Both the position numbers and the translations under genes were made by a program. Shown piece after piece: positions 1 to 54,257 of a stretch of DNA of 64,000 bases. Origin of the DNA: Octopus sinensis (Eukaryota); contig NW_021833473.1 in NCBI RefSeq assembly GCF_006345805.1, forward strand, positions 62,001 through 126,000, read 5' to 3'. The notes below the pieces were generated by a model. It did no database searches. It saw only the letters and a list, made by a program, of their open reading frames with translations, and was not told the DNA's origin. The first letter of the stretch is position 1. Every line of letters starts with the position of its first letter.

Positions 1-283
1 CTCTCTATAATATGAATACAATAACTCTTAAACTGGTCTCTTCAAACTTGTAGTAATAAACTTAAATTATAAAAACGATAATTACATTAAATTAAAATAC
101 TGATTTAAATATTACCTTCCATTATTTTTTTTTAATCTTTTCGTTCGCCTTTTCAATTTGCGCGAAGGAAACCATAACACAACGCAAACACGCAGAGATG
201 AAAGTGAAATATATCCCTATGATGGTAGCTAATTGCTTAAAAATAATTATGTGCATGCATACACGTATATATATGCGTATGTC

Positions 284-287
284 TATA

Positions 288-335
<48 letters not shown>

Positions 336-447
336 AATATATATATATATATATACAAATATATATATATATATATATTATATATACAAATATATATATA
401 TATATATATATATACAAATATATATATACGTACAAATATATATATAT

Positions 448-490
<43 letters not shown>

Positions 491-545
491 GCACACATAC
501 AAAAATACATACACACACACATATATAGGCATAGTGTGTGTGTGT
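284..545. repeat. (TA)n/(CA)n microsatellite
   Basis: Direct inspection; source of the IYIYIY ORFs. Confidence 0.97.
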
Positions 546-3191
546 GTGTACTTACATTAATATCACATATATAAACTTGTTGTAAAAAGGGGCTGTGTTG
601 TGATTGGACGAAATGTTCTTGCGTTCCTAATGCAGAATGATGTCAAATTATGGAAATATTCCCTGTTACGCCCACGCCTTTATGACACGAAGAAATTTCC
701 CTAGCTTCATAAAAGTAAAGATTATATTATATATGACTGATTAGTTAAATTTAAAACATTTGTAGTTCGACTTTTTTCGACCTCTTGAACATTGGAGACC
801 TCCCAAAATGTTTCCAACCAATTTTTCTACCTCCAGCATAATTCTCTTGCCAATGGAAGTTTATGCTGACCATTTGGAAATCCGTGCTTTAGAGCAAGAA
901 TGCCTAGAATCTTTTCGCTTTGACCGGCAGATTTTTAAAATAATTTCTTTGTAACTAAACACTTTTAAACTTCGTATACTGGCAGAATGTATTTATAAAA
1001 CATTTTTTTCTCATGGTTTTCTTGAGAAAATTAATTTCTTGCATTTCGGCAATTTCAACCAATCAATGACGTCTATTGAGGTGAATTCAATTTCTGCCGT
1101 AATGTGTCAACAACAAAATCAAAGACCAAATATCTTACAAACTACAGAATTTTCTCAAGAAAGCCAAAAGAAAAAGATGTTCTATAAACACATTCTACCA
1201 CTATACGAAGTTTAACATTTTTAGTTACAAAGAAATTATTTTAAAAATCTGCCGGTCAAAGCGAAAAGATCCAATGCCCCAGAGATGTTCTGTTATAGTT
1301 AGAACCACATTTAAGATGCTGCACAGGAATGTCAAATCGACTGCAGTACTTGATGGGTACTTTATTTTCCCGACACTAGAAAAGTAAAACGCAAAATTTA
1401 TCTCGGTACGTGAATGGCCAACAAAAACTGAAAATATTTTGTCTGTGCGTCTACGGAAACAACGCGAAACAAACCTGGTTCAGTCATCGAGAAAGTCTCA
1501 ATTTCTAGTTCTACAATCTTTACATTATCGCTTAAGCTTTCGTAAGCAGGATGGTGAAGTAAAATTATCCAAATATGTTCATTAAGATGAAGGAAGATCG
1601 ATTACCAGGAGCGTAACTTGGAAGGCGAACTCCTAAAGAAGATATTTTTATCAACATTATTAAACCGATCTTCTTTCTTTTTTATTAACAACAATGAAAG
1701 ATCGCCGTCCCCAGTTTTGTACAACTTGCGTTTCCAGTCAGCAATATTTTGTCCACTTGTTAAGCTTAACCCTGTTAATGCACGTTAGGCATTATTTGAA
1801 ACTGATTTAATATTTTTCCAGTGTCTTCGAAACACAAAATTATTTTGCTGCAAAACAGTTAAGTGTTTTTCTGAATTTTTAATAACATTCAGTTTAAATA
1901 AAGTAGTATATTGTTATGCTTATTCTGTTCGGTAATTTTTATTCAAGGTAATGGATAAATTATAACACTACAATACGAGGTAATAGTGCCCCAGGAAAGC
2001 TTCAGGGAAGCTGATTTCAGCTGTTCTGAGCATAAAAAAGAATGAAAAAGATGTACAATATGTAGATGTGTCAAAGACAAGATGAAGAAGATAAAGACAT
2101 AATTAAAATAATTAAAATGCACACACATACACACGCATACAGACAGACACATACGTATGGAAGAATAAAAAATAAAAAGAACATGCATTATTCATTTTAC
2201 ATTGCAGTTAGTTTCAAGAATATTATTGTAATCAAAACGTTTCAAAATACGATAATATGTACTCAAAAATAGATTATAGAAATCAAATTATTTCAAAATA
2301 CATTATTACATGTTCCAAAATAGCATATCATATCCAAAATACATCACTTAAATAAAATCATTACACTATTACATTCAAATCATTTCAAAATACATGATTA
2401 AACACTCCAAAATACATAATTACAATAACACATAACTGCAAATCCCAAAGTATACTATTTCAAACCGGTTTCATTTCTTATAGGAGATATTCATTGCAAT
2501 GAATTTGTGCAATGGCTTGCTACAAGCCTTCATTTGACACATTTTGTGGTTACAGGAAGGAAGTAACAAATGCAATAATATTATGTTAGTTTTATTTATT
2601 TATGTTTCGCATGGAAAAATATATTTCCCCATAATATTTGAATAGTTGAAGTACGTAAAGGTACTTCCCAGCTTTCTTTGTGTCTACTAACGTATATACT
2701 ATCTCCTTTGTTGTCATGTGAGTCTACAACGAGGTTGCACTATGTATTCAATGAAAGCTAGTAGTATGCCATTACACACGTACAGCGCAATGAATATCTC
2801 CTATAAAAAGTGAAACTGGTTTGTAATTATGCATTTTGGAATTTTTAATTATATATCATTATTATTATGTAGTTCGGTGTGTTTAACCATGTATTTTGAA
2901 ATAATATGAATATAAAAAATGTACTTTGGGATTCATAATATACATAATTTAATTGTAGTAATGAATTATGGATAGGATATGATATTTTGGAATATGCAAT
3001 AATGAATTTTGAAATAATTTGATTGTGATAACATTTTTGAATGCGTTTTATTGTATTTTGAACAAATTTGAATGTAATAATGTACTTTGGAATTAACTAA
3101 CTGCAATGTAAAACGACTAGTCCATCTCTGTTTTATTTTTACTCTTCATATCTCTCAACTTGTAAGGGATATTTTTACCATTATATATATA

Positions 3192-3706: not shown

Positions 3707-4099
3707 TGTGTGTGTGTGTGTGTGTATCTGCCATGATATCAATTAAGCACTCAATATAAAAGAATATGGTTAAATTTCCAAACAAACAGATACCAGTAAA
3801 TGTAATTAGAATACAAATCCCAGGTAAATCCTCATGCATGACAGGTAAATCCAACAGTCCTTTTGTAGAATTTTAAGAAATTCAGAATATTTTCCAACGG
3901 TCGCTGGATTTTTAATGTGAGATCTAAAATAATGATATAATTTCATTCGTACGTAATATTTGTTGTTGATAAATACATTGAATTTCTTAAAATTCTACAA
4001 AAGGATTATTGGATTTACCGATCAAGCATAAGATTTACTTGGGATTTGTACTCTGCTTATATTTACTGGTATCTGTTTGTTGGAAATTTAACCATATTC

Positions 4100-4132
<33 letters not shown>

Positions 4133-4592
4133 TATGGTAAGACGATTCCTTCCCAACCATATGATTACGGGTTCAGTCTATCAGTCCAACTGCGTGGCAC
4201 CTTGGGCAAGTGTCTACGACTACAGTCACAGCCTGACGAAAACCCTGTAAGTGGATTTGGTAAGCGGAAACTGAAAGAAACTAGTCGTATATATATGTGT
4301 GTGTGTTTGTCACCCACCACTGCTTGACAGCCGGTGTTGGTGTATTTATATGTCCGTAACATAGCTGTTCGGCAAAAGATATCGATAGAATAAGTATCAG
4401 GCTCTAAAATGTACTGGTGTCGATATATTCGTTTAAAAACTATTAAAGACAGTGCCTGAAACAAGTAAAAGAAAAAGGATGTATGTATTTATGTATGTGT
4501 ATAAATGTATGTATATATACATATATCTAAGTTTATAAATATATCTGTTTATACACTCACACACATTTATATGTATATCTGTATATATATAT

Positions 4593-9673: not shown

Positions 9674-10028
9674 TTTGTTGACAATTTTTTCTGCTTTGTA
9701 AGGGCAATTTTCACAGTATTTTTGCTGTTCTGATGGCAATTCTGCGTTCGAAACAAAAGAAAAGAAAATGGTGCAGGAATAAGTCCTGGGATCGATTTGC
9801 TCGACTAAAGGTGGTGCTCCAGCATGTCCGCAGTCAAATGACTGAAACAAGTAAGAGAGAGAGAGAGAGAGAGAGAGTGGCTGTGTGGTAAGATTGCTTA
9901 CCAACCACATAGTTTCGGGTTCAGTCCCACTGCGTGGCACCTTGAGCAAGTGTCTTCTACTATAGCCTCGGGCCGACCAAAGCCTTGTAAGTGAATTTGG
10001 TAGACGGAAACTGAAAGAAGCCCGTCGT

Positions 10029-10082
<54 letters not shown>

Positions 10083-11504
10083 AAATTACATATTACTTTG
10101 ACAGATAAATTCCTCTATTTACATAATATCGAGGTCTCTTTCTTTCTTTTGTTATCTTACCATTTTTATCAATAATATATATATATATATGAATGTATTT
10201 GTGTATCTGAGTTTCTCCCCACTATTATCGCTTGACAACCGATGTTGGTGTGTTAACGTCCCCCGTAACTTAGTGGTTCGGCAAAAAAAAATCGATAGAA
10301 TAAGTAGACTTAACAAAGAGTAAGTCTTGGGGTCGATATGTTCCACTAAAGGCAGTGCTCCGGCATGGCCGCAGTCAAATGTCTAAAACAAGTAGAGGAA
10401 TAGAGGAATACACGTAGAAAGCCTAAAAAATTTGATGGATGCTGTTAAGTCGATATCATCAACTCCAGAACTTGAACCATTATTTTATTTTATTGACCTC
10501 GGCAGAATAAAAGGCAACTTTGACCTAGGGATGATTTGAACTTAAAACTCAAGAACCGAAAGGATGTTATAAATGTCACTTACAGGTGTTAAAGAGATAT
10601 TATTTCGCATTTCTGAAATGCTAGATACAAAGTTATATGGGAGTTGTTCCCCTTGAACGAAAATATAGCGTCTTCATCCTTTTATTTATATTTTATAGTT
10701 AAAGAAGGAATGAAATGGTTTTCTTTTTTTACAAAATATTGAGATTCGTTTATCATATTTCTGTCTCACACACAACGAATATTACAAACCACCCAGAGAG
10801 GGTTAGAATCTCTATACGGTCACTTAACTGGCTGTGCATATAATCATTTTATTCAACACATTCCCTTCTCAGATTCATACACTTGTTGCAGCGGTCGTTC
10901 AGCTTGTTCTAAGCTCAGTTAAAGAACTCAGAAGGTTGGGTCTCAAACCAGGCCTTTCGCGACACCCTTAAAGCCAGGAACTTTTCAGTACCCCTCGTAT
11001 ACGAGATGCGTTCTTGAGACAAATACTCTGTAAATTTATGTTTGTTTTTGTGTGTTCCTTCGCAAGCCATGTCTGGCTCATAGGACCGGTTCCTCGATTT
11101 TTTTGGCGTATAGGTCCCCCATCTGGACAGGACGCCGGTCTGTCGCAGATGAGCTGCTAGATGCAGGAGGAAAGAGTGAGAGTAAGTTGTGGCGAAAGAG
11201 TCAGCAGAAGTTCGCCATTACCTTCTACCGGAGCCGTGTGGAGCTTAGGTGTTTCGCTCATAAACACAAACATCACCCGGTCTGTGATTCGAACGCGCGA
11301 TCCCTCGACCGCTGCTCTAACCACTAGGCCATGTAAATTTATATACGGGTTTCAAATTTTGACACAAGGTCAGCTATTTCGGGGAGCGGGTAAGTGGATG
11401 ACATCCACCCCAGTTGACCTCGGGGTAATTTGAACTCAAAACATTAGGATGGACGAAAAGCTGTTAGGCAATTTGCAGCTCTCTGCCTTGTGAATATCTA
11501 TATA

Positions 11505-15714: not shown

Positions 15715-16980
15715 CTAAAATAAAATATCACACAACATTAAGATTCAACCGTACTTACAATTTCATTTAAATCTTTTTTAATATGATTCTTTTAATTTTT
15801 TTTTTACTTTCTTAAAAACGATGACTATGATATATCTTTGACAACTAAAATGTCACAACATCAGAACAAGATTGGCAAACAGCCAATCATGAAAGACCTT
15901 GTCATTGTAACCTTCCTCAAGAAAACCCATTTATATATTCACTTGCCATAGAAATTCAATATATGGAACAACTAAGATAATTTTTTTTTTTAATATTTAG
16001 CTCTAATAGCTAATTAAAAATCACCCTAGCCCACACACCTCTTGAAAACGATGGTTTATTACTTATGGCCAACCTCATCTAAAAGACAAATTTGAAGGCT
16101 TTGTTACAAGATATTGAAAATACTGGGAAAAAATACAAGAAAGAAATGAAGTGATCAATGCCAGGCCATAAAAGGGTTTTCAGAAACCACACAAAATTTC
16201 AGACACAACTGGCACAGTACAAGACTATGCAAGAGAAAGAAAGCCAACCAAGGTCGCTTAAAACAGGGCAAGCAACATGTGTAAGTTACTAATTATAGCA
16301 CTTGCCAGATAAATGTGTGTGAGTATATATATATAAAAAAAAAAAAGTGCCCCAGCATGGCCACAGCTTGTGAGCTGAAACTAGATTAAAAAAAAAAAAA
16401 GCGTGTTTGCATGTGGAGGCACATGGCCTAGTGGTTAGAGCAGCAGACTACGGTTGAGGGATCGCCAGTTCAAATCTCAAATCAGGCGATGTGTGGGTGT
16501 TTATGAGTGAAATACCCAAGCCCCACGTGGCTCCAGCAGAAGGTAATGGCGAACTTCTGTAAATATGACAGGTTCAACAACTCAGTCTGCTTGGTCTAAA
16601 GGGGTGGTTTCCAACCAGGGTGCACATGACCCTTGGCAAGTCCATACAAGATTTTGTCGTTAAAATCTATGTGCAATCTTTTTTTATATAATTTCCAATA
16701 ATATTTCAATTATTGAAATATAATATATATTTTTTCTTAAAACATCGAATGGTTGCGATCAAGGGGAGATAAATCGAGTTAAGAAACTAGTTGCAAATAA
16801 TTAGTGATGGACGATATGTAATAGCTGCTGTTTTGTTATTTACAGTGAAATTCTGCAAATACTAATAAAAAACAAAATACAAGTAAAATGTTTCATATTA
16901 TCAAGTTTACTTTGACAACAGAAGACCTTGCTTAAGACACTATTATAATAAGAACAAAATGAAATCTGAAAGTATCTCAC

Positions 16981-17132
16981 CAGCGACAACAGCATCATTT
17001 TTCAAAGCCCTTCGCACAATCATAATGGCATCATGGAGAGATCTTTCGGTCTCTTCAATAAATTGTTCGGCACCACCTCTCAGAATCATTGTGCAGGTTT
17101 TCGCTTGGGGACATCCAGTGAAAATGTTATAC
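16981..17132 (-). CDS. CCT7: CCT7 exon 10: [50 protein letters not shown]
   Basis: LRGG and ERSLHDA chaperonin motifs; |gtgaga donor; 152 nt. Confidence 0.97.
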
Positions 17133-17781
17133 CTAACATCAAGTACAGCAATAAGAAAACATTAGTATCACTAACCTTAATAGTCAATTCTCAAAATTAT
17201 CAGTGTGACCACTTCACTGAGGATACAACCTGCTTTTGAACTAACAAAATTTATTACTAAACAGAGTCATCATCATCATCCTCATCGTCGTTTAACGTCC
17301 ATTCTCCATGCTAGCATGGGTTGGACGGTTCGACCGGGGATCTGGGAAGCCAGAAGGCTGCACCAGGCTCCAGTCTAATCTGGCAATGTTTCTACAGCTG
17401 GATGCCCTTCCTAACACCAACCACTCCGTGAGTGTAGTGGGTGCTTTTTACGTGCCACCTGCACTGGTGCCAGGCGAGGCTGGCATCGGCCACGGTCGGA
17501 TTGGTGCATTTTACGTGCCACCTGCACGGAACCCAGTTGAGAAGAAAAGTGAGAAATTTACATTTATTTTACTTTAATATTTTAAGTCTTGCAATGCAGT
17601 AATATATCTGGATATATTGTGAAGTAAATAACACAATAAAAAGACCATTTTTTATTAACTTTCATTGCGAATGAAAGCTGTAGTTTATATGTTCTTTATG
17701 TTGTAGCATAGTATACACGTAATTACAAGTCGAAAGAATCAACCAACAAACAGTATGTTGTCAAAGAATCGATATATTGAG

Positions 17782-17962
17782 ATATGTTGGTTTCAAAGAC
17801 TAAGTTCTACCAGATGGATTTGACAGAACAACTCTCATGAAACCAAAATAGTATCAAAATAAAACCAGAACAGTTCGACTTGTTGATACAACAGTTTTAG
17901 TATTCCACAAATGTAACACTGTATGACAATAGCAGACATCCAGTTGACTTGTATGTGGTATT
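17782..17962 (-). ncRNA. SNORA74: U19/SNORA74-like H/ACA snoRNA, copy a
   Basis: 5' hairpin has pocket AGTCA/GTTAC and H box ATACTA 14 nt downstream. A middle domain follows, then a 3' hairpin TGGTTTCA/TGAAACCA with pocket GAGAGT/TAGT and ACA+3. The pockets pair with LSU helix 69 GUAACUAUGACUCUC. Confidence 0.85.
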
Positions 17963-18360
17963 TCAGAAAAATGAGTTTTGGAAATTGTCAGTCATAAACC
18001 AATTCTGATGTCTAACATATTTGAGATAATAGTGGAGCTAACAACGACAATTCATGTACCAGTATTACTATATTATTATGAGATTCAATGTATTCAAAAA
18101 TCTTTAGTGAAACCCAGTATTTTGTGATTCATGGACTGTAAAAGAAAGCTGGTAATCAAGGTGTATGTTTGATAAGCTGCAACTAAACGAGAATGATTAG
18201 AGCAAAGCATTCAGATGAAAACCATGCCAAATCAGACTGGAGTCTGAGGTAGCCTTCCCCTGTGCCAGCCCAGTCAATCCGTTCAAATGGACATTAAATG
18301 ATGACGATGATGATGATAAGAATTATACCAATACAGTGGGGTAAGAATATTAATAGAATG

Positions 18361-18499
18361 TTATGTAGGTTTCATTTATCAAGTTCTACCATATTATGTT
18401 TGATAGAACAGCTCTCGTGTAACCAGATTAGTTTTAATATTCCACAAACGCAATACTGTATGACAATATTAGGCATCCAGTTGTCTTAAACTGTGGTAC
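18361..18499 (-). ncRNA. U19-related two-hairpin H/ACA candidate, copy 1
   Basis: Alignable to both U19 guide hairpins but lacks the middle domain; H box ATATTA, ACA+3, 139 nt; pockets altered. Confidence 0.55.
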
Positions 18500-19295
18500 A
18501 CTTTATATATGAAAAATAAATCATGTTATTAATGAACATTGTTAGTCATAATGATGTATATACAAAATTATTAGTTAGTAACACTGTGTTAAGGTACAAG
18601 GTTTATTAAATACAGTTAGATAAGACTTTAATTAGCTCAAAGCATTCAATCAACATTTTCAAAAACAAATTTGGTAATTATGAATAAATAATTCTAAAGC
18701 CTGAGAAAGGAAACACCATCCATAGTGTTACATGTAATACAGAACAAGATAATATTTAATAAATTAACCTATTTCATATCAATTAATACAAAGGCTACTA
18801 AAAATTATGTTTTGGCTTAACATTTTAGCATTCAACCTGGCCATATCCAGCCCAAATATTCCACCTGTTTTGTGTTCAAATCAGCCAGAACTGGCCTCTC
18901 ATACCTATCCTACTATGTCATTCTAAAAATAAACAATGTGAATAAGCATTACACTTGATAGAGTAATGTGAATGCTAAAGGTTTAAGGAAGATATTGACT
19001 AAATCCCTAAAAATTCTTTACTGATTCTCAAATTAACTGGAACAGATGTATTTTAATAGAAGTAATTTTATCACCCTGCATTGTTTAATAATTAGACTAT
19101 TTAATAAAGTAGATAAGTCAATGCACACAGGGCACTAAGTTTTCTGATGATAAGGTATCACCCATAAATTCAGATTCCTAATAAGATCTAAGCACAAAAT
19201 ACCAACTCAGTCATAAAGAATCAGATAAATTTATTAGTTTTATGAACGAATCAAAAAATTCTACAAATGTAGAGGAGTAAACCGTAGCACAGAGA

Positions 19296-19476
19296 CAATG
19301 TTGGTTTCAAAGACTAAGTTCTACCAGATGAATTTGACAGAACAACTCTCATGAAACCAAAATAGCATCAAAGTAAAACAAGAACAGTTCAACTTGTTGA
19401 TACAATAGTTTTAGTATCCCACAAATGTAACACTGTATGACAATAGCAGACATCCAGTTGACTTGTATGTGGTATT
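19296..19476 (-). ncRNA. SNORA74: U19/SNORA74-like H/ACA snoRNA, copy b
   Basis: Same 181-nt structure; boxes and guide strands intact. Confidence 0.85.
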
Positions 19477-20323
19477 TCAGATAAATAAGCCCTTTGGAAA
19501 TTGTCAGTAATATCCAGCCGTAGAAACACTGCCAGATCAGACTGGGAAATTGTCAGTAATATCCAGCTGTAGAAACACTGCCAGATCAGACTGGGCCTGA
19601 TGCAGCCTTCTGGCTTCACAGACCCCAGTTGAACTGTCCAACCCATGCTAGCATGGAAAGCGGACGCTAAATGATGATGAAACCAATTCTGATGTCTAAT
19701 ACATTTGAGATAATAGTGACGCTAACAACGACAATTCATGTATCAGTATTACTATATTACTTATGAAATTCAATGTATTCAAAAATCTTTAGTGAAACCC
19801 AGTATTTTGTGATTCATGGACTGTAAAAGAAAACTGGTAATCAAGGTGTATGTTTGATAAACTGCAACTAAACGAGAATGATTAGATCAAAGCATTCAGG
19901 TTTTAAAAAAATAAAAACAGACAATCAACTTAATATGCAATGAATTAGAAAGGTTAAAATAATTGACCACAATATCATCATCATAATCATTTTAAAAACA
20001 CAAGATATAAATTAGTGAGGTGAACAGGAAATGAAATATTAGATACAGCAAATATATTCATCCCATCACACACACATTCAGCTGCCTTACAAGATCAAAG
20101 CAATGAAGCACCAATTCGTGCTGGTGGCATGTAAATGCACCCATTACACTCTTGGAGTAGTTGGCATTAGGAAGGGCATCCAACCGCAGAAAACCATGCC
20201 AAATCAGACTGGAGTCTGAGGTAGCCTTCCCCTGTGCCAGCCCAGTCAATCTGTTCAAACGGACATATGATGATGATGATAAGAATTATACCAATACAGA
20301 GGGGTAAGAATATTAATAGAATG

Positions 20324-20462
20324 TTATGTAGGTTTCATTTATCAAGTTCTACCATATTATGTTTGATAGAACAACTCTCGTGTAACCAGATTAGTTTTAA
20401 TATTCCACAAACGCAATACTGTATGACAATATTAGGCATCCAGTTGTCTTAAACTGTGGTAC
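20324..20462 (-). ncRNA. U19-related two-hairpin H/ACA candidate, copy 2
   Basis: Near-identical to 18361-18499. Confidence 0.55.
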
Positions 20463-21346
20463 ACTTTATATATAAAAAACAAATCATGTTATTAATGAAC
20501 ATTGTTAGTCATAATGATGTATATACAAAATTATTAGTTAATCAATAACACTGTGTTAAAGGTACAAGGTTTATTAAATACAGTTAGATAAGACTTTAAT
20601 TAGCTCAAAGCATTCATTCAACATTTTCAAAAACAAATTTGATAATTATGAATAAATAATTCTAAAGCCTGAGAAAGGAAACCCCACCCAGTGTTACATT
20701 TAATACGGAACAAGATATTATTTAATAAATTCATATCAATTAATACAAAGTCTACTAAAAATTATATTTTGTGTAAAAATTTTTGGCTTAACATTTTAGC
20801 ATTCAACCTGGCCGTATCCAGCCCAAATATTCCACCTGTTTTACGTTCAAATCAGCCAGATCTGGACTCTCCTACCTATCCTACTATGTCATTCTAAAAT
20901 AAACAATCACATCATTGAAATATTGAATACATAAGTAATTTAAACCAATGTGAATAAGCATTACATTTGACAGAGTAATGTGGATGCTAAAGGCTCAAGG
21001 AAGATATCAACTAAATCCCTAAAAATTCTTTACTGATTCTCAAATTAACTGGAACAGATGTATTTTAATAGAAGTATGAGAAATGAAAGGTAACAATGAC
21101 CTTTTGATATAATTTTATCACCCAGCATTGTTTAATAATTAGACTATTTAATAAAGTAGATAAGTGAATGCACACGGGGCACTAAGTTTTCTGATGGTAA
21201 GGTATTACCCATAAATTCAGATTCCTTGTAAGATCTAAGCACAAAATACCAACTCAGTCATAAAGAATCAGATAAATATTTTTATTAGTTTTATGGACGA
21301 ATCTAAAAATTCTACAAATGTAGAGGAGTAAACCTTAGCACAGAGA

Positions 21347-21527
21347 CAATGTTGGTTTCAAAGACTAAGTTCTACCAGATGAATTTGACAGAACAACTCT
21401 CATGAAACCAAAATAGCATCAAAGTAAAACAAGAACAGTTCGACTTGTTGATACAATAGTTTTAGTATCCCACAAATGTAACACTGTATGACAATAGCAG
21501 ACATCCAGTTGACTTGTATGTGGTATT
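21347..21527 (-). ncRNA. SNORA74: U19/SNORA74-like H/ACA snoRNA, copy c
   Basis: Same 181-nt structure; boxes and guide strands intact. Confidence 0.85.
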
Positions 21528-22118
21528 TCAGATAAATAAGCCCTTTGGAAATTGTCAGTCATAAACCAATTCTGATGACTAATATATTTGAGATAATAGT
21601 GACGCTAACAACGACTAGTGAAACCAAGTATTTTGTGATTCATGGACTGTAAAAGAAAACTGGTAATCAAGGTGTATGTTTGATAAGCTACAAGTAAACG
21701 AGACAGACAATCAACTTAATATGTAATGAATTAGAAAGGTTAAAATAATTGACCACAATATCATCATCATAATCATTTTAAAAACACAAGATATAAATTA
21801 GTGAGGTGAACAGGAAATGAAATATTAGATACAGCAAATATATTCATCCCATCACACACACATTCAGCTGCCTTACAAGATCAAAGCAATGAAGCACCAA
21901 TTCGTGCTGGTGGCATGTAAATGCACCCATTACACTCTTTGAGTAGTTGGCATTAGGAAGGGCATCCAACCGCAGAAAACCATGCCAAATCAGACTGGAG
22001 TCTGAGGTAGCCTTCCTGTGTGCCAGCCCAGTCAATCTGTTCAAACAGACATTAAATGATGACGATGATGATGATAAGAATTATACCAATACAGTGGGGT
22101 AAGAATATTAATAGAATG

Positions 22119-22257
22119 TTATGTAGGTTTCATTTATCAAGTTCTACCATATTATGTTTGATAGAACAACTCTCGTGTAACCAGATTAGTTTTAATATTC
22201 CACAAACGCAATACTGTATGACAATATTAGGCATCCAGTTGTCTTAAACTGTGGTAC
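22119..22257 (-). ncRNA. U19-related two-hairpin H/ACA candidate, copy 3
   Basis: Near-identical to 18361-18499. Confidence 0.55.
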
Positions 22258-23032
22258 ACTGTATATATAAAAAACAAATCATGTTATTAATGAACATTGT
22301 TAATCATAATGATGTATATACAAAATTATTAGTTAATCAATAACACTGTGTTAAAGGTACTAGGTTTATTAAATACAGTTAGAAGATAAGACTTTAATTA
22401 GCTCAAAGCATTCATTCAATATTTTCAAAAACAAATAATTCTAAAGACTAAGAAAGGAAACACCACCCATAGTGTTACATTTAATACTGAACAAGATATT
22501 ATTTAATAAATTCATATCAATTAATACAAAGTCTACTAAAAATTATATTTTGTGTAAAAATTTTTGGCTTAACATTTTAGCATTCAACCTGGCCATATCC
22601 AGCCCAAATATTCCACCTGTTTTATGTTCAAATCAGCCAGAACTGGCCTCTCATACCTATCCTACTATGTCATTCTAAAAATAAACAATGTAAATAAGCA
22701 TTACATTTGACAGAGTAATGTGGATGCTAAAGGCTTAAGGAAGATATTGACTAAATCCCTAAAAATTCTTTACTGATTTTCAAATTAACCGGAACAGATG
22801 TATTTTAATAGAAGTAGGAGAAACGAAAGGTAAAAATGACCTTTTGATATAATTTTATCACCCAGCACTAAGTTTTCTGATGATAAGGTATCACCCATAA
22901 ATTCAGATTCCTTGTAAGATCTAAGCACAAAATACCAACTCAGTCATAAAGAATCAGATAAATATTTTTATTAGTTTTATGGACAAATCAAAAATTTCTA
23001 CAAATGTAGAGGAGTAACGCTTAGCACAGAGA

Positions 23033-23213
23033 CAATGTTGGTTTCAAAGACTAAGTTCTACCAAATAAATTTGACGGAACAACTCTCATGAAACCAAAAT
23101 AGCATCAAAGTAAAACAAGAACAGTTCAACTTGTTGATACAACAGTTTTAGTATTCCACAAATGTAACACTGTATGACAATAGCAGACATCCAGTTGACT
23201 TGTATGTGGTATT
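23033..23213 (-). ncRNA. SNORA74: U19/SNORA74-like H/ACA snoRNA, copy d
   Basis: Same 181-nt structure; guides intact, with a few loop and upper-stem changes. Confidence 0.82.
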
Positions 23214-23710
23214 CCAGATAAATAAGCCTTTTGGAAATGATATCGAACCAAGTAAGAGACATTACCAACAATTCAGTTACTAGTACTATAATAGAGCTTA
23301 CTAAACAACACTGCAATCAAAACAAATTACAGTTGAACAACAATATTTCAAGTACTTTTAAAGTAAAATCACCAGGAAACACTTTCATGCAATATCTAAT
23401 AACCAGTAATAGAATATGAAGAATGTCGAAAACTTTGCTGAGTGTATATATTATATATTTGATTATTGTGATGCAGATGATTTATTTACTCAAAACATCT
23501 GTTCAATATAACCTTTATCCATTTGTAAACATTAGATAAGCTTCAGATTAGTAATAACTATGAATATGAATGATTATCATACGCAGCAAAATGTAAAGAT
23601 TTTCAGAGGATTAAAAAGAAAGAATAATAATAATAATAATAATAAAAGGGATGGTCTGTCATTCATATGACTCAAAAAATCATCTATTTTCACTTCAAGT
23701 ATATCATATA

Positions 23711-24074
23711 CTAGCACTATGACCTGGCGTTGCCGGGTCATAGTGCTAGTGCATGCATATACAGCCGCGTGCGTGTGCACATACACGCAAGTACTGTCCA
23801 AATCTCCGACCAATCACATACAGCTAGCTGGCATTCAATTGGCGTATCAAGTTTCGGGCATTTTGATTGGGTTTTGGATAGAAAATTCACAAAAAAGTCA
23901 CTTCTATTGATTTCTTAATGGCTTTGCGGGGTGACTGGGGAAATGTAAAGATGTGCACGACCACCCTTGGACGGTTTTGAACGACTGTAGAAAGTACGAG
24001 CCCTCTAACTGAAAAATTGTGGATTTGTATAAAGGGCACACATGCAGACATCTTGCCGTTTATATATATAGAGA
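23711..24074 (-). mobile_element. Different Helitron-like non-autonomous element
   Basis: 5' TCTCTATATATA; 3' long hairpin ending CTAG|T. Confidence 0.7.
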
Positions 24075-24621
24075 TCATATAATAATGGAGTCTATTCGCT
24101 ATGTAAAATGTAAATAGAAAGAAAACGAAGACAAATCGGTTGAATAGAACTATATTTAAGGAGCCATCTAATAAACAAAACTATGGTTTTCGAGTTGGTT
24201 TATGTATTCAAACAACCATAACAAAAATTGCGAAATTTATGCAAGAACTTTTGGCTAAGTTGTGACTGAAACATCAGCTTAATAAACAAGCTTTATGAAA
24301 TCAGTCTAAATTCACAAGTATTTTGGAATTTAAATTAAAACGCAGAAGGGTGAGATAAATTAGAAACATAATAGTAAACGGGTTAATTCATATCGGACTC
24401 AACCAATCAAGTTTATAGATTTCCAATGCCAAGCATATTTTTTTTGTGGGAGGTGTTGTGTCTTCAGGTAAAGATGTTTAAGATAGTTTTATTGTTAACA
24501 AACCCATTTGGTAGCAATATTAAAGGAAAAGAAAACATATTCCTGTTATATACATAAACACAAGAATTTCTTTAGAGGATAGAGTTAAGGCTGCATAAAA
24601 CACAATAAGTTAATCAGTTAC

Positions 24622-24774
24622 CTGTCGCCTCCAATTTGCTGTTCTTCAAAATGTTCACATTTTCCAAGATTTTTCTCAGTCATCTTTTGAACTGATGTTA
24701 AGATGGCACCACCACAAGCTTTCATGGTTCGATGAAGATCATCATCAACTACACGGCCAGCACAAAACATGTCT
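24622..24774 (-). CDS. CCT7: CCT7 exon 9: [51 protein letters not shown]
   Basis: tag| and |gtaact; 153 nt. Confidence 0.97.
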
Positions 24775-25998
24775 CTAAAAAATAAAAGTCGTATTGTCAG
24801 ACGACAGAAAGAGGAAATACTTCCATATTAAATCGACTCAACGCTGGGCTATGTATTCCTTTCACTACTGTCACAACCTTTAAAACTACACACACACACA
24901 CCAACAACAATTTCTCCACTAAACTGTATTATATAAACTCCCACCACTAATGGTTCCGCAATTCATTATCTTTCACTCCAATCAAAGGTTTACGACTACA
25001 CTAAATACTTTGTCTTAATTACTTTCTCTCAAGCTGTATACATCATCATCATCATCATTTAACGTCCGCTTTCCATGCTAGCATGGGTTGGACGATTTTG
25101 ACTGAGGGCTGGCGAACCAGATGGCTGCACCAGGCTCCAATCTTGATTTGGCAGAGTTTCTACAGCTGGATGCCCTTCCTAACATCAACCACTCGTGGAG
25201 TGTAGTGGGTGCTTTTTACGTGCCATCTTATATATTAAACCTTCACACATTATATTTTATAGCAGAGAAGAATGATTATAGTCTTACAAGTTTGATTATT
25301 TGTTCAACCAATGAAGTAGTGTTTAGCTGAAAATAACCACTCAATAATTGGTACGCACATATTAAATCAAAGGCATCATATATTTGGAAGTGTCATAAGC
25401 AAAACAGATGAGTTTAGGAAATAATTCTTCACAACCAAAGAATTAGCAAACTGTTATAAAATCCTATACATACAAACACACACACACTAACTCCCTCATA
25501 ATATGAACACAGTATCACATCAATCCATCAGCATTTAAACCAGCCATATGCTGCCCAAATACTCTAGCCTTTCCTACTTTACAATGCCATTTTAAAAACA
25601 ATCGTATGGCGACCTGCTGTGCTTGAGGAGACCTATCGAGTCAAGTACATCAACATCAAAAAAGTCAAATGGAAATTGTAGTTGTGATACCTGTGCCGGT
25701 GGCACATAAAAAGCACCTACTACACCCACGGAGTGGTTGGCATTAGGAAGGGCATCCAGCTGTAGAAACTCTGCCAGATCAGACTGGAGCCTGGTGCAGC
25801 CTCCTGGCTCCCCAGACCCCAGTTGAACCATCCAACCCATGCTAACATGGAAAACGAACGTTAAACGACAATGATGATGTATCAAAGTCTTGCTGCTATG
25901 GGATAATGCACAATTCATTCAAAACTACCTGAGTAAATAAACATTACATTTGACCTGAATGATAAAGGGTTAATGTTTGTGTTTATAGAAAGACATAC

Positions 25999-26686: not shown

Positions 26687-27657
26687 TATTGCTATGTCCT
26701 GTAACATTGAAAAGTTCTATATCACGGATAAATCTGCAGGTCTCTAAATCCTGAACTATAATTCAAATAGTGCTGTTTGGGAATAAAAACCTGAAACTAA
26801 ACGTTCTTTTGTATGATTAAGTTTAACTCCATTTTAGGAAAAACATTCTGTTTGTACCATGTGTGTATATTTTTTTGCCTTTTATCAAGAAAATTTCTCC
26901 AAATCTTTTTTCTTCTTTTGACTTTCAAGCACAACATCAGTTAATGCTGCAAGTGGTAAGTTAAAACTCACTGATACAATCTGTTAATGATTTAATTCGG
27001 AAACAATGCCCAAATATCAATATCTGGTGACCGTGTGTGAAAACACAGGTCGTCAAATCTTCACAACGAACACCAACAATCACTGTATCAGCAAATTTCA
27101 TTCAAATTCACACAACAATTATATTTTCATAAGACACCCGTGCCGGTGACAGCACCGCCTGACTGGCATCCGCGTTGGTGACCCGTAAAAGCACCAACCA
27201 ATTGTGGCTGTTTGCCAGCCTGTTCTGGCACATAAAAAACACCCACTACACTCTCGGAGTGGTTGGCGTTAGGAAGGGCATCCACCTGTAGAAACACTGC
27301 CAAATCAGACTAGAGCCTGGTGCAACCTCCATGGCTTCCCAGACCCCTGTCGAACTGTCCAACCCATGCTAGCATGGATAACGGACGTTAAATGATGATG
27401 ATGAGCTTGATACTGGACTGTCTGCATTTCTTTTGAATGTCTCGTTTCTAACAGGACAGTCATTTACATTGAGAAAGCATCTGAGAACATCATGACTACT
27501 AAACACATCTCGTATAGTCATGGAATTTATAATATAAGACTACCAGGTCATTGGTTAAAAGTAAACTTCACAGAATACAAAACAAAAAATACCAAAATTC
27601 AACGCAAAATCACAGCTAGAGCTGTGTGATAAGATTAACAATAAAATTAATAATTAC

Positions 27658-29127: not shown

Positions 29128-30951
29128 CACTTGCATTTTATCAACAGTGCAAAAGTGAGCAGCTGGATTTAGGAGGCAATGGAAGAGTCCTGAAGATGAC
29201 CCAAGGTCTTGACATCCTGCAACTGCCAGCACTGAAGAAAACATTGATCATGTTCACTACATGGAGACGGAAGAAAGGCAATTGACTTTAAATCAAAAAT
29301 CCAGTGCTATTAGTTTATCTTTTGAAGAGAGCTGATAATATTCTGCTTGGTGGGTGCTACACCTGACATCTGATCAAAAGTGCACCAGGCTGACCAGAGC
29401 AAATATTCTGCTTGGTGGGTGCTACACCTGACATCTGATCAAAAGTGCACCAGGCTGACTAGAGCAAATATTCTGCTCGGTGGGTGCTACACCTGACATT
29501 TGATCTAAAGTGCACCAGGCTGACCAGAGCAAATATTCTGCTTGGTGGGTGCTATACCTGACATCTGATCTAAAGTGCACCAGGCTGACCAGAGCAAATA
29601 TTCTTCTTGGTGGGTGCTACACCTGACATCTGATCAAAAGTGCACCAGGCTGACCAGAGCAAATATTCTGCTTGGTGGGTGCTACACCTGACATCTGATC
29701 AAAAGTGCACCAGGCTGACCAGAGCAAATATTCTGCTTGGTGGGTGCTACACCTGACATCTGATCAAAAGTGCACCAGGCTGACCAGAGCAAATATTCTG
29801 CTCGGTGGGTGCTACACCTGACATCTGATCTAAAGTGCACCAGGCTGACCAGAGCAAATATTCTGCTTGATGGGTGCTACACCTGACATCTGATCAAAAG
29901 TGCACCAGGCTGACCAGAGCAAATATTCTGCTTGGTGGGTGCTACACCTGACATCTGATCTAAAGTGCACCGGGCTGACCAGAGCAAATATTCTGCTCGG
30001 TGGGTGCTACACCTGACATCTGATCTAAAGTGCACCAGGCTGACCAGAGCAAATATTCTGCTTGGTGGGTGCTACACCTGACATCTGATCAAAAGTGCAC
30101 CAGGCTGACCAGAGCAAATATTCTGTTTGGTGGGTGCTACACCTGACATCTGATCAAAAGTGCACCAGGTTGACCACAGCAAATATTCTGTTTGGTGGGT
30201 GCTACACCTGACATCTGATCAAAAGTGCACCAGGCTGACCACAGCACAGGAAAACCTGACATTGTCTATGGCACATCCAGTTGGCTTCTTTGAAAGTTTC
30301 CTAGGTCAGGATGAGTGTTAGGTTCATCACTTTGAGCCAGGGACAAAGATACATTCCATCCAGTGGAAACACCTCTCCTCACTTGCTCCAAATAAGGTCA
30401 TGCTTGTTTCATCAGCAGGGAAGGTGATGGCCTGTTCCTTGGGATACAAAAGGCATTGTGTTTATTGATGTCTTCAAAAGAGTCATACATCAAAGGAAAG
30501 TACGATGCCAACATGTTGAGGCAGTTAAGAAAGGCTATCAAGACCAAAAAAAAACCAAACAAATGGGATTTTGTTTCATCAGGACAATGTTCCAGCACAA
30601 AAAAAACCTTGCTTTCAAGGGCTGGTGTGCATGACTGTGACTTTGAACCAGTAGATCCCTGCCCCAGCTATTCTCTTGATTTGACTCCTTCTGATTATCA
30701 TGTACCCCAGCATGAAAAAAACACTTGGCTGGGAACTAATATCGCAGATGATGTCATATCTGCTGTTGTTGGCCCTTTATTTTTGACTAACAGGATGAAA
30801 GCTTCTTCACCAATGTGATCCAAGCACTGCAACACCAATGGAAAAATAGTTCTTGTAAGTAGGAACTATTTTGAAAAATAAAAAAAACCTCATCTGGTCA
30901 CATTCCATAAGAATATTTTGAACAGCCTATGAACTTTTCGGCTGACCGTCA
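29128..30951 (+). mobile_element. Degenerate mariner transposon, 5'-truncated, in CCT7 intron 5
   Basis: Broken reading frames resemble mariner transposase (STVQKWAAEFRR, EDDPRSGRP, DE..HHFEP, LRQLRKAIK, QDN, YSLDLTPSDY); 3' TIR-like cctatgaacttttcggctgacc at about 30926-30948. Confidence 0.85.
29341..30245 (+). repeat. 65-bp minisatellite, 14 copies
   Basis: Unit TTCTGCTTGGTGGGTGCTACACCTGACATCTGATCAAAAGTGCACCAGGCTGACCAGAGCAAATA starts at 29341, 29406 ... 30186. Confidence 0.97.
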
Positions 30952-33219: not shown

Positions 33220-33962
33220 CTGAAGATAAAAAGATAATTACCATGATTAATTCAAATAAGGGCTAACTAACTAATGCTAAAAAGAAGTATCTTTGCTTAA
33301 CGTCTTCTGTTTTTTTCAGCAAAAGCACATCTAACTATATTATTGTTATTAGCAGATTGGCCCCCGTGCCATGGCACGTAAAAGGGTACCATTCAAGCGT
33401 GATTGTAACCAACGCCGCCCGACAGGCCCTCGTGCCAGTGGCACGTAAAAAGCACCCACTACACTCTCGAAGTGGTTGGCTTTAGGAAGGGCATCCAGCT
33501 GTAGAAACTCTGCCAGATCAAGATTGGAGCCTGGTGCAGCCATCTGGTTTGCCAGCCCTCAGTCAAAATCGTCCAACTCATGCTAGCATGGAAAGCGGAC
33601 ATTAAACAATGATGGTGATGATAAATATCACAAGGTTTCGTTTATCACTTTAATTAAAATTTTAAAAAAAAATTCCGTTTAATTAAAAGTTTAAAGCACA
33701 AAAGATAATATCACCATTTTAAAATCTTGTATATTTAATATTTATATAAGACAAAGTTGAAATACAGTAATATGTAATAGAGTTAAATCATGATCTAGTT
33801 TCACTGAGGTGCTACACAATTAACTTTCAGCAATTTATTTTATTAGAGTTTAAAATTCATGGATTTGATATTTAAGTATATAAAGGAACAGACAGTGAGA
33901 AACGGTAACTACACATGAAGAAACTAAGCTAAAAATTTAATTAAAATATATACTGAACAAAC

Positions 33963-41387: not shown

Positions 41388-41605
41388 ACACACACACACA
41401 CGTACGCACGCGCGCGCACACACACACGTACGCACGCACACGCCTGCACACACACACAACACACGCATACACACACACACACACACACACGCACGCACAC
41501 ACGAACACACACACACGCGCGCGCACACACACACGCACGCGCGCGCACACACATACACACACATGCGTACGCACGCACACACACACATACACACACACAC
41601 ACGAC
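41388..41605. repeat. (CA)n/(CGCA)n compound microsatellite just upstream of the CCT7 promoter
   Basis: Direct inspection. Confidence 0.95.
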
Positions 41606-46081: not shown

Positions 46082-46289
46082 CTTGTTCTTTTATTTTATT
46101 TGTTTCATTCATTTGACTGCGGCCATGCTGGAGCACCGCCTTTAGTCGAGCAAATCGACCCCAGGACTTATTCTTTGTAAGCTTAGTACTTATTCTATCG
46201 GTCTCCATTGCCGAACCGCTAAGTGTCGGGGTCGTAAACACACCAGCATCGGTTGTCAAGCGACGTTGGGGGGACAAACACACAAACGT

Positions 46290-46323
<34 letters not shown>

Positions 46324-46358
46324 GTATGTTTGTATGTATGTAAGTATGTATGTATGTG

Positions 46359-46449
<91 letters not shown>

Positions 46450-52736: not shown

Positions 52737-53976
52737 CAGACATAACCGAAGTAAATAGACACCACATAAAACATCGTTTTGTATTTATTCTAACTTGTAA
52801 AGGTTTATATTTTTTATTGATTGGCATTTTTATGTTTCAGGTTCTATATGTGACTGTTTAATCATGCCATATACAAAAGAAGCCTTGGAACTGTCTGAAT
52901 TTCAAAGAGGCCGTATTGTGGGTCATTCTGAAGGTGGATGTAGTGTAACATCGTAGAAAACCTTGGGATCCTACTTTCTACAGTTAATAGAGGGACTGTG
53001 CAATTGACCAGATAGATGAAAGAGTCCACATCACCTTGTCCAGATCAACCAGGGACCTCTGACAGGACCCTTCACTTTGCTAAGAGAACTGTGGAGGACA
53101 GTCCTCGTTGTAAGACCTTTGACATAGCAGAACAAGTGGGTATCAGTCCCAGAACAGCTGTCAGGTATCTCCACAAACTTGGTTACTATGGTAGAGCAGG
53201 AAGAAGGAAACCACATCTTTGATCAGCTAATATGAAGCAGAGAAAAGATTGGGCCAGTGAGATGGTGGAGAGGCCTTTTGGGACATTATCATATTCTCCA
53301 ATGATTCCAGATTTGCTGTATTTTCTGACAGTGGTCAAGTGTTGGTCTGGAGATTCTGTGATCAAGAATTTGGTGTGGAAAGATTGCAGCCAACAATGAA
53401 ACATGGCAGCTATACTGTGGTTGTCTGGGGAGCAATTTTGAGCAATGGTTGGTTGATCAGAGCTGGTGGAAGTAAGAAAAACATAAACTCCGATAAATAT
53501 ATGTCCATATTGCAGAAAGGACACTTTCCAATCTTCTCAAATGGTGAAATGATTAAAGAAGACTCTTTATTTATGGAAGATGGGGCTCTTTGTCACACGC
53601 CTAAAATGACCCAAGATTTGTTGGATGAAAAAGGTATTAAAAGGCTTCCACGGCCAAGCCAGTTACCAGATATGAACCCTATTGAACAGCACTGGAGAAT
53701 AATGGACAGGACACTTCATAAAAGGAACAAGAAAGCATCTTCAAAGCCAGATCTTTTGAGATTACTGCATCAAAATTGGCAAGAAATTCTTCAAGAGAAT
53801 ATTCATCATCTGATCATTAATATGCCTAATAGAGTCTTTGCATTGAAAAATGCAAAGGGCACGTCTATTAAATATTTAATATTCACATTATAACAATTAA
53901 TAATTTGAATGTATAATTTCAGATTTATATAAATTTTAATGATTATAAGGGTGTCCATTTACTTCTGTTATGCCTG
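52737..53976 (+). mobile_element. Near full-length degenerate Tc1-family transposon (DD34E)
   Basis: About 27-bp imperfect TIRs (CAGACATAACCGAAGTAAATAGACACC / GGTGTCCATTTACTTCTGTTATGCCTG); ATG at 52864 (MPYTKEALELSEFQRGRIVG); ORF 53339..53893 has EDGA..34 aa..NPIE; frameshifted. Confidence 0.92.

Positions 53977-54220: not shown

Positions 54221-54257
<37 letters not shown>

What the first reader, a model, noticed from the sequence alone, without database searches (positions are those of the whole stretch)
17782..23213. Tandem array of four intact U19/SNORA74-type snoRNAs inside a single CCT7 intron
Seen: four 181-nt copies on the host sense strand, each with H box, ACA+3 and two pockets. The 5' pocket (AGTCA/GTTAC, 14 nt from H) pairs as GUAAC-U-A-UGACU. 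The 3' pocket (GAGAGT/TAGT, 15 nt from ACA) pairs as ACUA-U-G-ACUCUC. Differences between copies fall mostly in loops and spacers, not in the guides. Established: these are the two conserved helix-69 pseudouridines (yeast 25S 2258/2260, human 28S 3741/3743) guided by yeast snR191 and human U19, which is unusually long. Vertebrate U19 sits in a different host, and vertebrate introns usually carry one snoRNA each. Inference: a CCT7-hosted, copy-amplified, polycistronic intronic cluster that would need endonucleolytic cutting to release more than one RNA per lariat.
Basis: partly seen in the sequence, partly recalled or inferred. Interest (0 to 1): 0.9.

Follow-up and report, generated by a model that had tools for sequence, protein, structure and literature searches.

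The report
Octopus CCT7 intron snoRNA array
One intron of the octopus chaperonin gene CCT7 holds four intact copies of the small RNA that guides two conserved ribosomal RNA modifications; this host-gene arrangement is ancient in invertebrates, and the multi-copy layout is a known kind.

Summary
Four 181-nt H/ACA snoRNA genes lie on the minus strand: 17782-17962, 19296-19476, 21347-21527 and 23033-23213. CCT7 is on the same strand, and all four sit in its 7.5-kb intron (17133-24621).

Each copy matches Rfam SNORA74 over the full model (40-45 bits, E about 1e-8), below the gathering score of 71. Each has an H box, ACA+3, the U19-type internal hairpin and two pockets. The pockets pair with the helix-69 loop in 118 and 120 of 120 eukaryotic rDNA contigs.

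The window is Octopus sinensis. New here:
- The array alternates with three copies of a shorter 137-nt paralogue ("X") whose guides have changed.
- Copy number is 5 in O. vulgaris, and 2 in O. bimaculoides and Argonauta.
- SNORA74-like genes also sit in CCT7 introns of cuttlefish, chiton, scallop, brachiopod, nemertean and sea urchin, often two or more per gene. Their stems covary and their guides are almost invariant.

Intronic H/ACA clusters are already known from Drosophila and rice. I therefore class this as a new member of a known kind, of moderate interest. Expression, processing and the modifications themselves were not tested.

The parts
17133..24621 (-). CCT7 intron (7,489 nt) holding the whole array. 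It follows the codon for residue 356 (...QIGGDR | YNIFTG...).
   Evidence: GT at 24621-24620 and AG at 17134-17133. Exon map by tblastn on the identical locus L005.
23033..23213 (-). It has a U-to-C change in the 3' upper stem that gives a C.A mismatch.
   Evidence: Rfam SNORA74 40.8 bits, E 6.8e-8. Own model R1 161.9 bits. Orthologous to the first copy in O. vulgaris and O. bimaculoides.
22119..22255 (-). X paralogue, copy 1: a 137-nt H/ACA-like element. It lacks the internal hairpin, has H box AUAUUA and ACA+3, and its guide strands are changed.
   Evidence: Alignment to the A copy, coordinates, R1 65.1 bits.
21347..21527 (-). U19/SNORA74-like snoRNA, copy 2 in gene order.
   Evidence: Rfam 39.9 bits. 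R1 161.3 bits.
20324..20460 (-). X paralogue, copy 2.
19296..19476 (-). U19/SNORA74-like snoRNA, copy 3 in gene order.
   Evidence: Rfam 40.5 bits. R1 160.7 bits.
18361..18497 (-). X paralogue, copy 3. It has GAGAGC in place of GAGAGU in the 3' pocket.
17782..17962 (-). U19/SNORA74-like snoRNA, copy 4 in gene order, 648 nt upstream of the 3' splice site. Elements: 5' pocket AGUCA 17945-17949 and GUUAC 17913-17917; H box 17898-17903; 3' pocket GAGAGU 17831-17836 and UAGU 17799-17802; ACA 17785-17787.
   Evidence: Rfam 44.7 bits, E 4.9e-9. R1 165 bits. Fold -43.8 kcal/mol, z = -2.1. Element map. Orthologous to the last copy in O. vulgaris and O. bimaculoides.
24622..24776 (-). CCT7 exon upstream of the intron, residues about 305-356. 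The 5' boundary is approximate.
16979..17132 (-). CCT7 exon downstream of the intron, residues about 356-407. The 3' boundary is approximate.

Best explanation
These are genuine octopus orthologues of the U19/SNORA74/snR191 box H/ACA snoRNA, carried in sense orientation in one intron of CCT7.

Shown here:
- Four copies have the hairpin, H box, internal hairpin, hairpin, ACA architecture.
- The stems covary across phyla.
- The two guide pockets are nearly invariant and complementary to the loop of 28S helix 69. They place the two uridines equivalent to E. coli 1915 and 1917 (yeast 2258 and 2260) in the unpaired target position.
- The first and last copies are old paralogues, kept intact in three Octopus species while their flanks diverged.
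- The inner copies, each with an adjacent shorter paralogue X, arose by tandem duplication of 1.5-2 kb units in the O. vulgaris / O. sinensis lineage.

Inferred:
- The array is transcribed as part of the CCT7 pre-mRNA.
- H/ACA proteins assemble on each unit.
- The spacers are removed by endonucleolytic cuts followed by exonuclease trimming, because trimming of a debranched lariat from its two ends alone cannot separate internal units.
- The mature RNAs of about 181 nt direct pseudouridine formation at the two helix-69 sites.

CCT7 is an ancient host for this snoRNA in invertebrate bilaterians. Vertebrates carry it in MATR3 instead.
For: - Full-length SNORA74 hits, E about 1e-8.
- The minimum-energy fold reproduces the three-hairpin layout, z = -2.1.
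- Target scan on 120 eukaryotic rDNA contigs. The 5' pocket pairs 5+5 bp with GUAAC[UA]UGACU in 118 contigs. The 3' pocket pairs 4+6 bp with ACUA[UG]ACUCUC in 120 contigs.
- snR191 guides yeast pseudouridines 2258 and 2260 and is conserved to humans.
- Thirteen CCT7-hosted homologues from 8 taxa give 88% of cells paired, against 37-46% when the partners are slid. Twenty pairs change on both sides, against 6-12. None of 500 shuffles reached the observed values.
- A model built from these sequences finds two further copies in sea-urchin CCT7, which were not used to build it, at 82-84 bits.
- None of the 12 positions that vary among the four copies falls in the 68 nt of pockets, boxes and lower stems.
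- First and last copies with 150-nt flanks are only 66% alike, while the snoRNA bodies are about 95% alike. Each has an orthologue at 90-97% in two other Octopus species.
- Between Octopus and Argonauta, only exons and the snoRNAs still align.
- Independent assemblies of three Octopus species all show arrays.
Against: - No hit reaches Rfam's gathering score: 45 bits at most here and 63 at most in other invertebrates, against 71.
- No RNA data were available, so expression, mature ends, processing and the pseudouridines are untested.
- The inner copies are young. Spacers are 95.0-97.6% identical and the snoRNAs 96.7-99.4%, so the intactness of the inner copies says little about selection on each one.
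- Copy 1 in gene order has a C.A mismatch in a stem.
- The octopus 28S sequence itself was not available. Pairing was checked on rDNA from other eukaryotes.
Confidence: 0.85

Rival explanations
1. Only one or two copies (probably the old first and last ones) produce functional snoRNA. The inner copies are recent, selectively neutral by-products of unequal crossing-over between repeated units, and there is no selection for higher dosage.
For: - Copy number is 2, 2, 4 and 5 in four octopod genomes.
- The inner units differ from each other by only 3-5% in spacers as well as in the snoRNAs.
- One O. vulgaris inner copy carries two stem-weakening changes and scores lowest, at 34.6 bits.
Against: - All copies keep the boxes, guides and lower stems. 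The A and X segments have no indels, while each spacer segment has 110-467 gap columns.
- Multi-copy arrangement in CCT7 recurs in many phyla.
- This rival is compatible with the main explanation for at least two copies.
Confidence: 0.3
2. The units are independent transcription units that lie inside the intron. Each has its own promoter, so no intron-dependent or endonucleolytic processing is needed.
For: Some invertebrates and plants transcribe snoRNAs independently (my own knowledge). Each repeated unit carries 1.5-2 kb of sequence that could hold a promoter.
Against: - Sense orientation in introns of the same host gene is kept across phyla, over roughly half a billion years by my estimate.
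- In Lineus two copies sit 72 nt apart in an intron of about 680 nt, which leaves no room for separate promoters.
- No promoter test was made here.
Confidence: 0.07
3. The repeat array is an assembly artefact: a single snoRNA locus that was wrongly expanded.
For: Read depth could not be examined here. Tandem repeats are prone to assembly errors, so the exact copy number could be wrong or polymorphic.
Against: - The units differ in length (1514, 2051 and 1686 nt) and in sequence.
- The independent chromosome-level O. vulgaris assembly shows the same alternating A-X pattern with 5+4 copies. O. bimaculoides shows 2+2.
Confidence: 0.03

Closest known systems
Human U19 / SNORA74A (Rfam RF00090)
   Same: The hairpin, H box, extra internal hairpin, hairpin, ACA layout. 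The pocket sequences GUCA/GUUAC and UGAGAGU/UAGUCU are identical to the capitalised consensus of the Rfam model. The inferred targets are the same two helix-69 uridines.
   Different: - 181 nt against 200 nt.
- The score is below the family's gathering cut-off.
- The host is a CCT7 intron, not a MATR3 intron.
- Four tandem copies share one intron instead of one copy per intron.
Yeast snR191
   Same: It guides the two conserved helix-69 pseudouridines, 25S 2258 and 2260. The pockets here pair with the same sequence.
   Different: By my own knowledge snR191 is an independently transcribed, non-intronic, single-copy gene. No sequence comparison was made here.
[quoted passage not shown] 2004, J Mol Biol 341:669; Huang et al. 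2005, RNA 11:1303) and rice intronic snoRNA clusters (Liang et al. 2002, NAR 30:3262)
   Same: Several snoRNA genes lie in a single intron of a host gene, on the sense strand. By my own knowledge these are often isoforms made by tandem duplication.
   Different: The phylum, host gene and snoRNA family differ. I could read these papers only through citations in PMC2780460 and PMC5932544, so their details were not checked.
C. elegans ceN81 (Rfam RF01658)
   Same: Weak matches (24-34 bits, E 0.04-0.8) to the 5' hairpin, which shares the GUCA/GUUAC pocket.
   Different: It is a shorter RNA, only the 5' half matches, and the match is far below its gathering score of 50.

Membership tests
U19 / SNORA74 / snR191 (helix-69 pseudouridylation guide) | Box H/ACA architecture: 5' hairpin, H box (ANANNA), 3' hairpin, ACA | tested here: met
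   H box AUACUA at RNA positions 60-65 and ACA at 176-178. The hairpins appear in the minimum-energy fold. They are supported by covariation across 13 homologues.
U19 / SNORA74 / snR191 (helix-69 pseudouridylation guide) | Extra internal hairpin between the H box and the 3' hairpin, which gives the unusual length | tested here: met
   It aligns to the middle stem of the Rfam model and folds at positions 74-112. The apical stem covaries, and the loop motif C-GUU-U-G is invariant across phyla.
U19 / SNORA74 / snR191 (helix-69 pseudouridylation guide) | 5' pocket complementary to helix 69, placing the uridine equivalent to E. coli 1915 / yeast 2258 unpaired, 14-16 nt from the H box | tested here: met
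   GUAAC[UA]UGACU pairs 5+5 bp in 118 of 120 eukaryotic rDNA contigs. The spacing is 14 nt. Octopus 28S itself was not available.
U19 / SNORA74 / snR191 (helix-69 pseudouridylation guide) | 3' pocket complementary to helix 69, placing the uridine equivalent to E. coli 1917 / yeast 2260 unpaired, 14-16 nt from the ACA | tested here: met
   ACUA[UG]ACUCUC pairs 4+6 bp in 120 of 120 contigs. The spacing is 15 nt.
U19 / SNORA74 / snR191 (helix-69 pseudouridylation guide) | Score at or above Rfam's curated gathering cut-off (71 bits). This is an operational annotation threshold, not a biological feature. | tested here: not met
   39.9-44.7 bits in the window and 44-63 bits in other invertebrate CCT7 loci. 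All matches are full length, with E from 1e-7 to 2e-13. I read the shortfall as divergence from the sequences behind the Rfam model, whose make-up I did not check, and not as non-homology.
U19 / SNORA74 / snR191 (helix-69 pseudouridylation guide) | A stable nucleolar RNA bound by dyskerin, with pseudouridine present at the two target sites | not testable with these tools
   No RNA-seq, CLIP or modification data could be reached.
Intronic snoRNA gene cluster | Two or more snoRNA genes within one intron, on the host's sense strand | tested here: met
   Four A copies and three X copies lie between the GT at 24621 and the AG at 17133, all on the minus strand like CCT7.
Intronic snoRNA gene cluster | All members are released from the host's intron transcript | not testable with these tools
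   This needs RNA data or a minigene experiment.

The most novel reading that the evidence does not exclude
The octopod array would be a duplicated two-gene module, not a simple amplification.
- One gene is the canonical helix-69 guide. The other is a shortened paralogue (X) that lost the internal hairpin and acquired new guide pockets.
- The X 5' pocket is identical in every Octopus copy aligned and in two Argonauta copies, although the apical loop changed. It may direct a lineage-specific pseudouridine in 28S about 74 nt upstream of the helix-69 sites, at GACGCAA[UG]UGAUUU, a sequence resembling the ancestral target.
- Separately, CCT7 would be the ancestral bilaterian host of this snoRNA, lost in vertebrates.
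Probability: 0.3. Interest if true: 0.6.

Novelty: new member of a known kind. Interest (0 to 1): 0.45.

Why it matters
Helix-69 pseudouridines are among the most conserved rRNA modifications. Their guide appears to be unannotated in molluscs and their relatives, because it scores below Rfam's cut-off.

Finding it in CCT7 introns of molluscs, a brachiopod, a nemertean and a sea urchin gives three things:
- a simple anchor for annotating it in other invertebrate genomes;
- a possible case of a very long-lived snoRNA-host association;
- a natural series for study, from one copy per intron, through two copies in a 680-nt intron, to seven H/ACA units in a 7.5-kb intron. The series can be used to ask how animals release several snoRNAs from one intron, which is poorly understood outside yeast and plants.

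The X paralogue is a candidate example of a guide RNA acquiring a new target after duplication.

None of this overturns current understanding.

Tried and rejected
- **Rfam at gathering thresholds:** nothing found. Only the E-value mode showed the hits.
- **Other Rfam hits in the window:** mir-297, mir-3149, mir-BART10, SCARNA7, sno_ZL1 and a tmRNA fragment all lie on TA/CA microsatellites and were dismissed. A SNORA81 hit at 23661-23770 had E = 3.4 and was dismissed.
- **X outside octopods:** nhmmer with an X profile found X only in Octopus and Argonauta, not in Sepia or beyond.
- **Targets of the X pockets:**
  - Ranking by raw pairing score brings up only chance hits in spacers.
  - Ranking by conservation gives the 28S site upstream of helix 69 for the X 5' pocket.
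  - Shuffled guides do as well in 19 of 200 trials, the same level as the true A pockets (17 and 22 of 200). The test has little power and the X target remains tentative.
  - No convincing target was found for the X 3' pocket or the Argonauta Y 5' pocket.
- **Papers I could not open:** Huang et al. 2005 is not held. The helix-69 paper PMC2875026 does not print the sequence in its text.
- **Prior reports of a snoRNA in CCT7:** literature searches found none. This is not proof that none exist.
- **One protein look-up failed:** Owenia.
- **Sepia:** the exons for residues 54-130 were not located, so its snoRNA intron is unassigned.
Full report

Yes. The repeat finder reports four copies of a 192-nt unit at 17784, 19298, 21349 and 23035, 94-96% identical. 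At gathering thresholds Rfam finds nothing in the window. In E-value mode the SNORA74 model (RF00090) matches all four copies over its whole length on the minus strand. The scores are 39.9-44.7 bits, with E 4.9e-9 to 1.2e-7 in a 7-kb search and about 5e-8 to 1e-6 in the full window. All other hits in the window sit on TA/CA microsatellites.

The RNAs are 181 nt each, at 23213-23033, 21527-21347, 19476-19296 and 17962-17782. The minimum-energy fold gives a 5' hairpin, an internal hairpin and a 3' hairpin, at -43.8 kcal/mol and z = -2.1 against shuffles.
- AGUCA and GUUAC pocket strands, 14 nt from the H box AUACUA.
- GAGAGU and UAGU pocket strands, 15 nt from the ACA, which is followed by 3 nt.

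Twelve positions vary among the copies: four in the internal hairpin, three in the 3' apical loop, one in the 3' upper stem, two in linkers and two in the 3' tail. None lies in the 68 nt of pockets, boxes and lower stems.

**2. Host gene**

Stop-to-stop reading frames on the minus strand give a complete set of CCT-type exons. Concatenated, they score 881 bits against human CCT7, against 287 bits or less for other subunits. The best database match is Octopus vulgaris CCT7.

The intron runs from the GT at 24621-24620 to the AG at 17134-17133. It splits ...QIGGDR | YNIFTG.... All copies lie in this one intron, in the sense orientation.

The window is identical over 12.6 kb to the Octopus sinensis assembly (L005).

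**3.

A self-comparison of the intron shows that whole units of 1.5-2 kb are repeated. Each unit also carries a second element related to the snoRNA's 5' hairpin. Aligned, this element ("X") has these features:
- It is 137 nt long, at 22255-22119, 20460-20324 and 18497-18361.
- It is an H/ACA-like paralogue that lacks the internal hairpin.
- It keeps an H box (AUAUUA) and ACA+3.
- Its guide strands are altered: AAGACA/AUUGC in place of AAGUCA/GUUAC, and CGAGAGU/UGAUAA in place of UGAGAGU/UAGUCU.

In gene order the array is therefore A-X-A-X-A-X-A.

**4. Relatives**

I fetched CCT7 loci through the protein index.

| Species | Array in CCT7 |
|---|---|
| O. sinensis (window) | A-X-A-X-A-X-A |
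| O. vulgaris | A-X-A-X-A-X-A-X-A (5 A, 4 X) |
| O. bimaculoides | A, X, X, A |
| Argonauta hians | two A copies and four short forms |

With 150-nt flanks, the first copies of the three Octopus species are 92-97% alike, and the last copies are 90-95% alike. First against last is only about 66%, although the snoRNA bodies are about 95% identical. So at least two copies are old paralogues that have both been kept intact. The inner copies arose later in the vulgaris/sinensis lineage.

Within O. sinensis, the identities between units are 96.7-99.4% for A, 99.3-100% for X and 95.0-97.6% for the spacers. The spacers also carry many indels, and A and X carry none. Between Octopus and Argonauta, only exons and the snoRNAs still align.

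**5. Beyond octopods**

Rfam SNORA74 in E-value mode finds copies inside CCT7 of these species:

| Species | Copies | Bits |
|---|---|---|
| Sepia pharaonis (cuttlefish) | 2 | 44-49 |
| Liolophura sinensis (chiton) | 2 | 58-62 |
| Pecten maximus (scallop) | 3 | 59-63 |
| Lingula anatina (brachiopod) | 1 | 49 |
| Lineus longissimus (nemertean) | 2 | 46 |
| Haliotis rubra (abalone) | 0 | none |

In an alignment of 13 of these sequences, the guide strands, the H box core and the ACA are invariant. For the H/ACA structure I specified:
- 88.3% of cells are paired, against 37-46% when the partners are slid.
- Twenty pairs change on both sides, against 6-12.
- The covariation score is 0.495, against 0.154 or less.
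- None of 500 shuffles reached the observed values.

A covariance model built from this alignment (R1) recovers all copies at 133-167 bits, X at 59-67 bits and the Argonauta short forms at 34-42 bits. It also finds two copies in the CCT7 gene of the sea urchin Diadema setosum, which was not in the training set, at 82-84 bits. In those copies the 3' pocket is intact and the 5' pocket has one mismatch.

The intron used differs among lineages:

| Intron follows residue | Lineage and copies |
|---|---|
| 356/357 | octopods; Lineus, where two copies lie 72 nt apart in an intron of about 680 nt |
| 305/306 | Pecten (1) and Diadema (1) |
| 130/131 | Pecten (2) and Lingula (1) |
| 90 | chiton (2) |
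| 210 | Diadema (1) |

The Sepia position is unresolved.

The vertebrate host is MATR3. I found no paper that reports a snoRNA in CCT7.

**6. Targets**

Yeast snR191 guides pseudouridines 2258 and 2260 in helix 69 and is conserved to humans. I had no octopus rRNA, so I collected 120 eukaryotic rDNA contigs from metagenomes using the helix-69 sequence as a probe. I then scanned them with the pocket strands.
- The A 5' pocket pairs 5+5 bp around GUAAC[UA]UGACU in 118 contigs.
- The A 3' pocket pairs 4+6 bp around ACUA[UG]ACUCUC in 120 contigs.

For X, the 5' pocket strands are identical in every Octopus copy aligned and in two Argonauta copies, while the apical loop changed. That argues for selection on this pocket. 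Its best conserved candidate is GACGCAA[UG]UGAUUU in the large-subunit rRNA, 74 nt upstream of the helix-69 site, with 7 bp on one side and 5 of 6 on the other. Shuffled guides match as well in about 10% of trials, which is the same as for the true A pockets, so this assignment is tentative. By my own count this uridine is not a pseudouridine known in yeast or human; this rests on memory and was not tested.

The Octopus X 3' pocket resembles the 3' pocket of a different Argonauta short form ("Y"). This fits a division of the two pockets between paralogues, but no convincing target was found for it.

**7. How it most likely works**

Shown: the sequence, the structure, the covariation, the complementarity to the target and the conserved intronic sense location.

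Inferred:
- The array is transcribed within the CCT7 pre-mRNA.
- H/ACA proteins assemble on each unit.
- Internal units are released by endonucleolytic cleavage in the spacers, followed by exonucleolytic trimming. The literature describes lariat debranching plus exonucleases for single intronic snoRNAs, and endonucleases for polycistronic precursors.
- The mature RNAs guide the two helix-69 pseudouridines.

The rivals are listed separately: only some copies are productive; each unit is transcribed independently; the array is an assembly artefact. The artefact is excluded in practice by three independent assemblies.

**8. Comparison with what is known, and novelty**

The RNA belongs to the U19/SNORA74/snR191 type by architecture, by its third hairpin and by both guides. 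It misses Rfam's operational cut-off.

Several H/ACA snoRNAs in one intron is an organisation described in Drosophila and rice. Tandem duplication of snoRNAs is also commonplace.

What appears to be new:
- this family's members in lophotrochozoans and an echinoderm;
- their shared CCT7 host;
- the alternating A/X module in octopods.

I class it as a new member of a known kind, with moderate interest (0.45). It would be useful for annotation and as a system for studying multi-snoRNA intron processing and guide retargeting. It is not surprising in principle.

Noticed in passing
window 18361-18497, 20324-20460, 22119-22255 (minus): A second, 137-nt H/ACA-like paralogue ('X') alternates with the U19-like copies. 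It has no internal hairpin and its guide pockets are changed. It occurs only in Octopus and Argonauta. Its 5' pocket is identical in both genera, although the loop diverged.
   Followed up: partly
L004, L006, L007, L009, L010, L011 (CCT7 loci of Sepia, chiton, Pecten, Lingula, Diadema, Lineus): SNORA74-like snoRNAs sit in CCT7 introns across molluscs, a brachiopod, a nemertean and a sea urchin. There are often two or three per gene, in different introns in different lineages. None was found in Haliotis rubra CCT7 (L008).
   Followed up: partly
alignment A3 columns 101-111; window copy at 17782-17962, RNA positions about 89-99: The apical loop of the internal hairpin carries a motif (C-GUU-U-G, CUGUUCUGG in this copy) that is invariant from octopus to nemertean. 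It also matches the Rfam consensus loop. Its function is unknown.
   Followed up: no
window 29337-30246: A minisatellite of 14 copies of a 65-nt unit, 96% matching, inside another CCT7 intron.
   Followed up: no
window 17282-17464, 19561-19680, 20118-20229, 21904-22015; similar stretches at about 25600-25900, 27130-27460 and 33350-33640: A short interspersed repeat recurs throughout the window. Inside the snoRNA intron, copies lie in opposite orientations (80-88% over 110-120 nt). They could form long duplexes in the pre-mRNA, which might be relevant to RNA editing or cleavage. This is pure speculation.
   Followed up: no
window 53261-53890 (+): An open frame with a weak DDE_3 (Tc1/mariner-type transposase) match, E 4.9e-6, just below Pfam's cut-off. 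Neighbouring frames at 56613-58600 gave no Pfam match.
   Followed up: partly
window 247-560, 4016-4576, 10020-10084, 41493-41596, 46234-46412, 54218-54747, 55253-55333, 60701-60774, 63711-63977: TA/CA microsatellites produce many spurious sub-threshold Rfam hits (mir-297, mir-3149, mir-BART10, mir-9, SCARNA7, sno_ZL1).
   Followed up: yes
L003 (Argonauta hians) 17209-17343, 18006-18138, 19831-19968, 21133-21270: Argonauta has two kinds of short paralogue. One shares the Octopus X 5' pocket and the other shares its 3' pocket, as if the two pockets had been divided between duplicates.
   Followed up: partly
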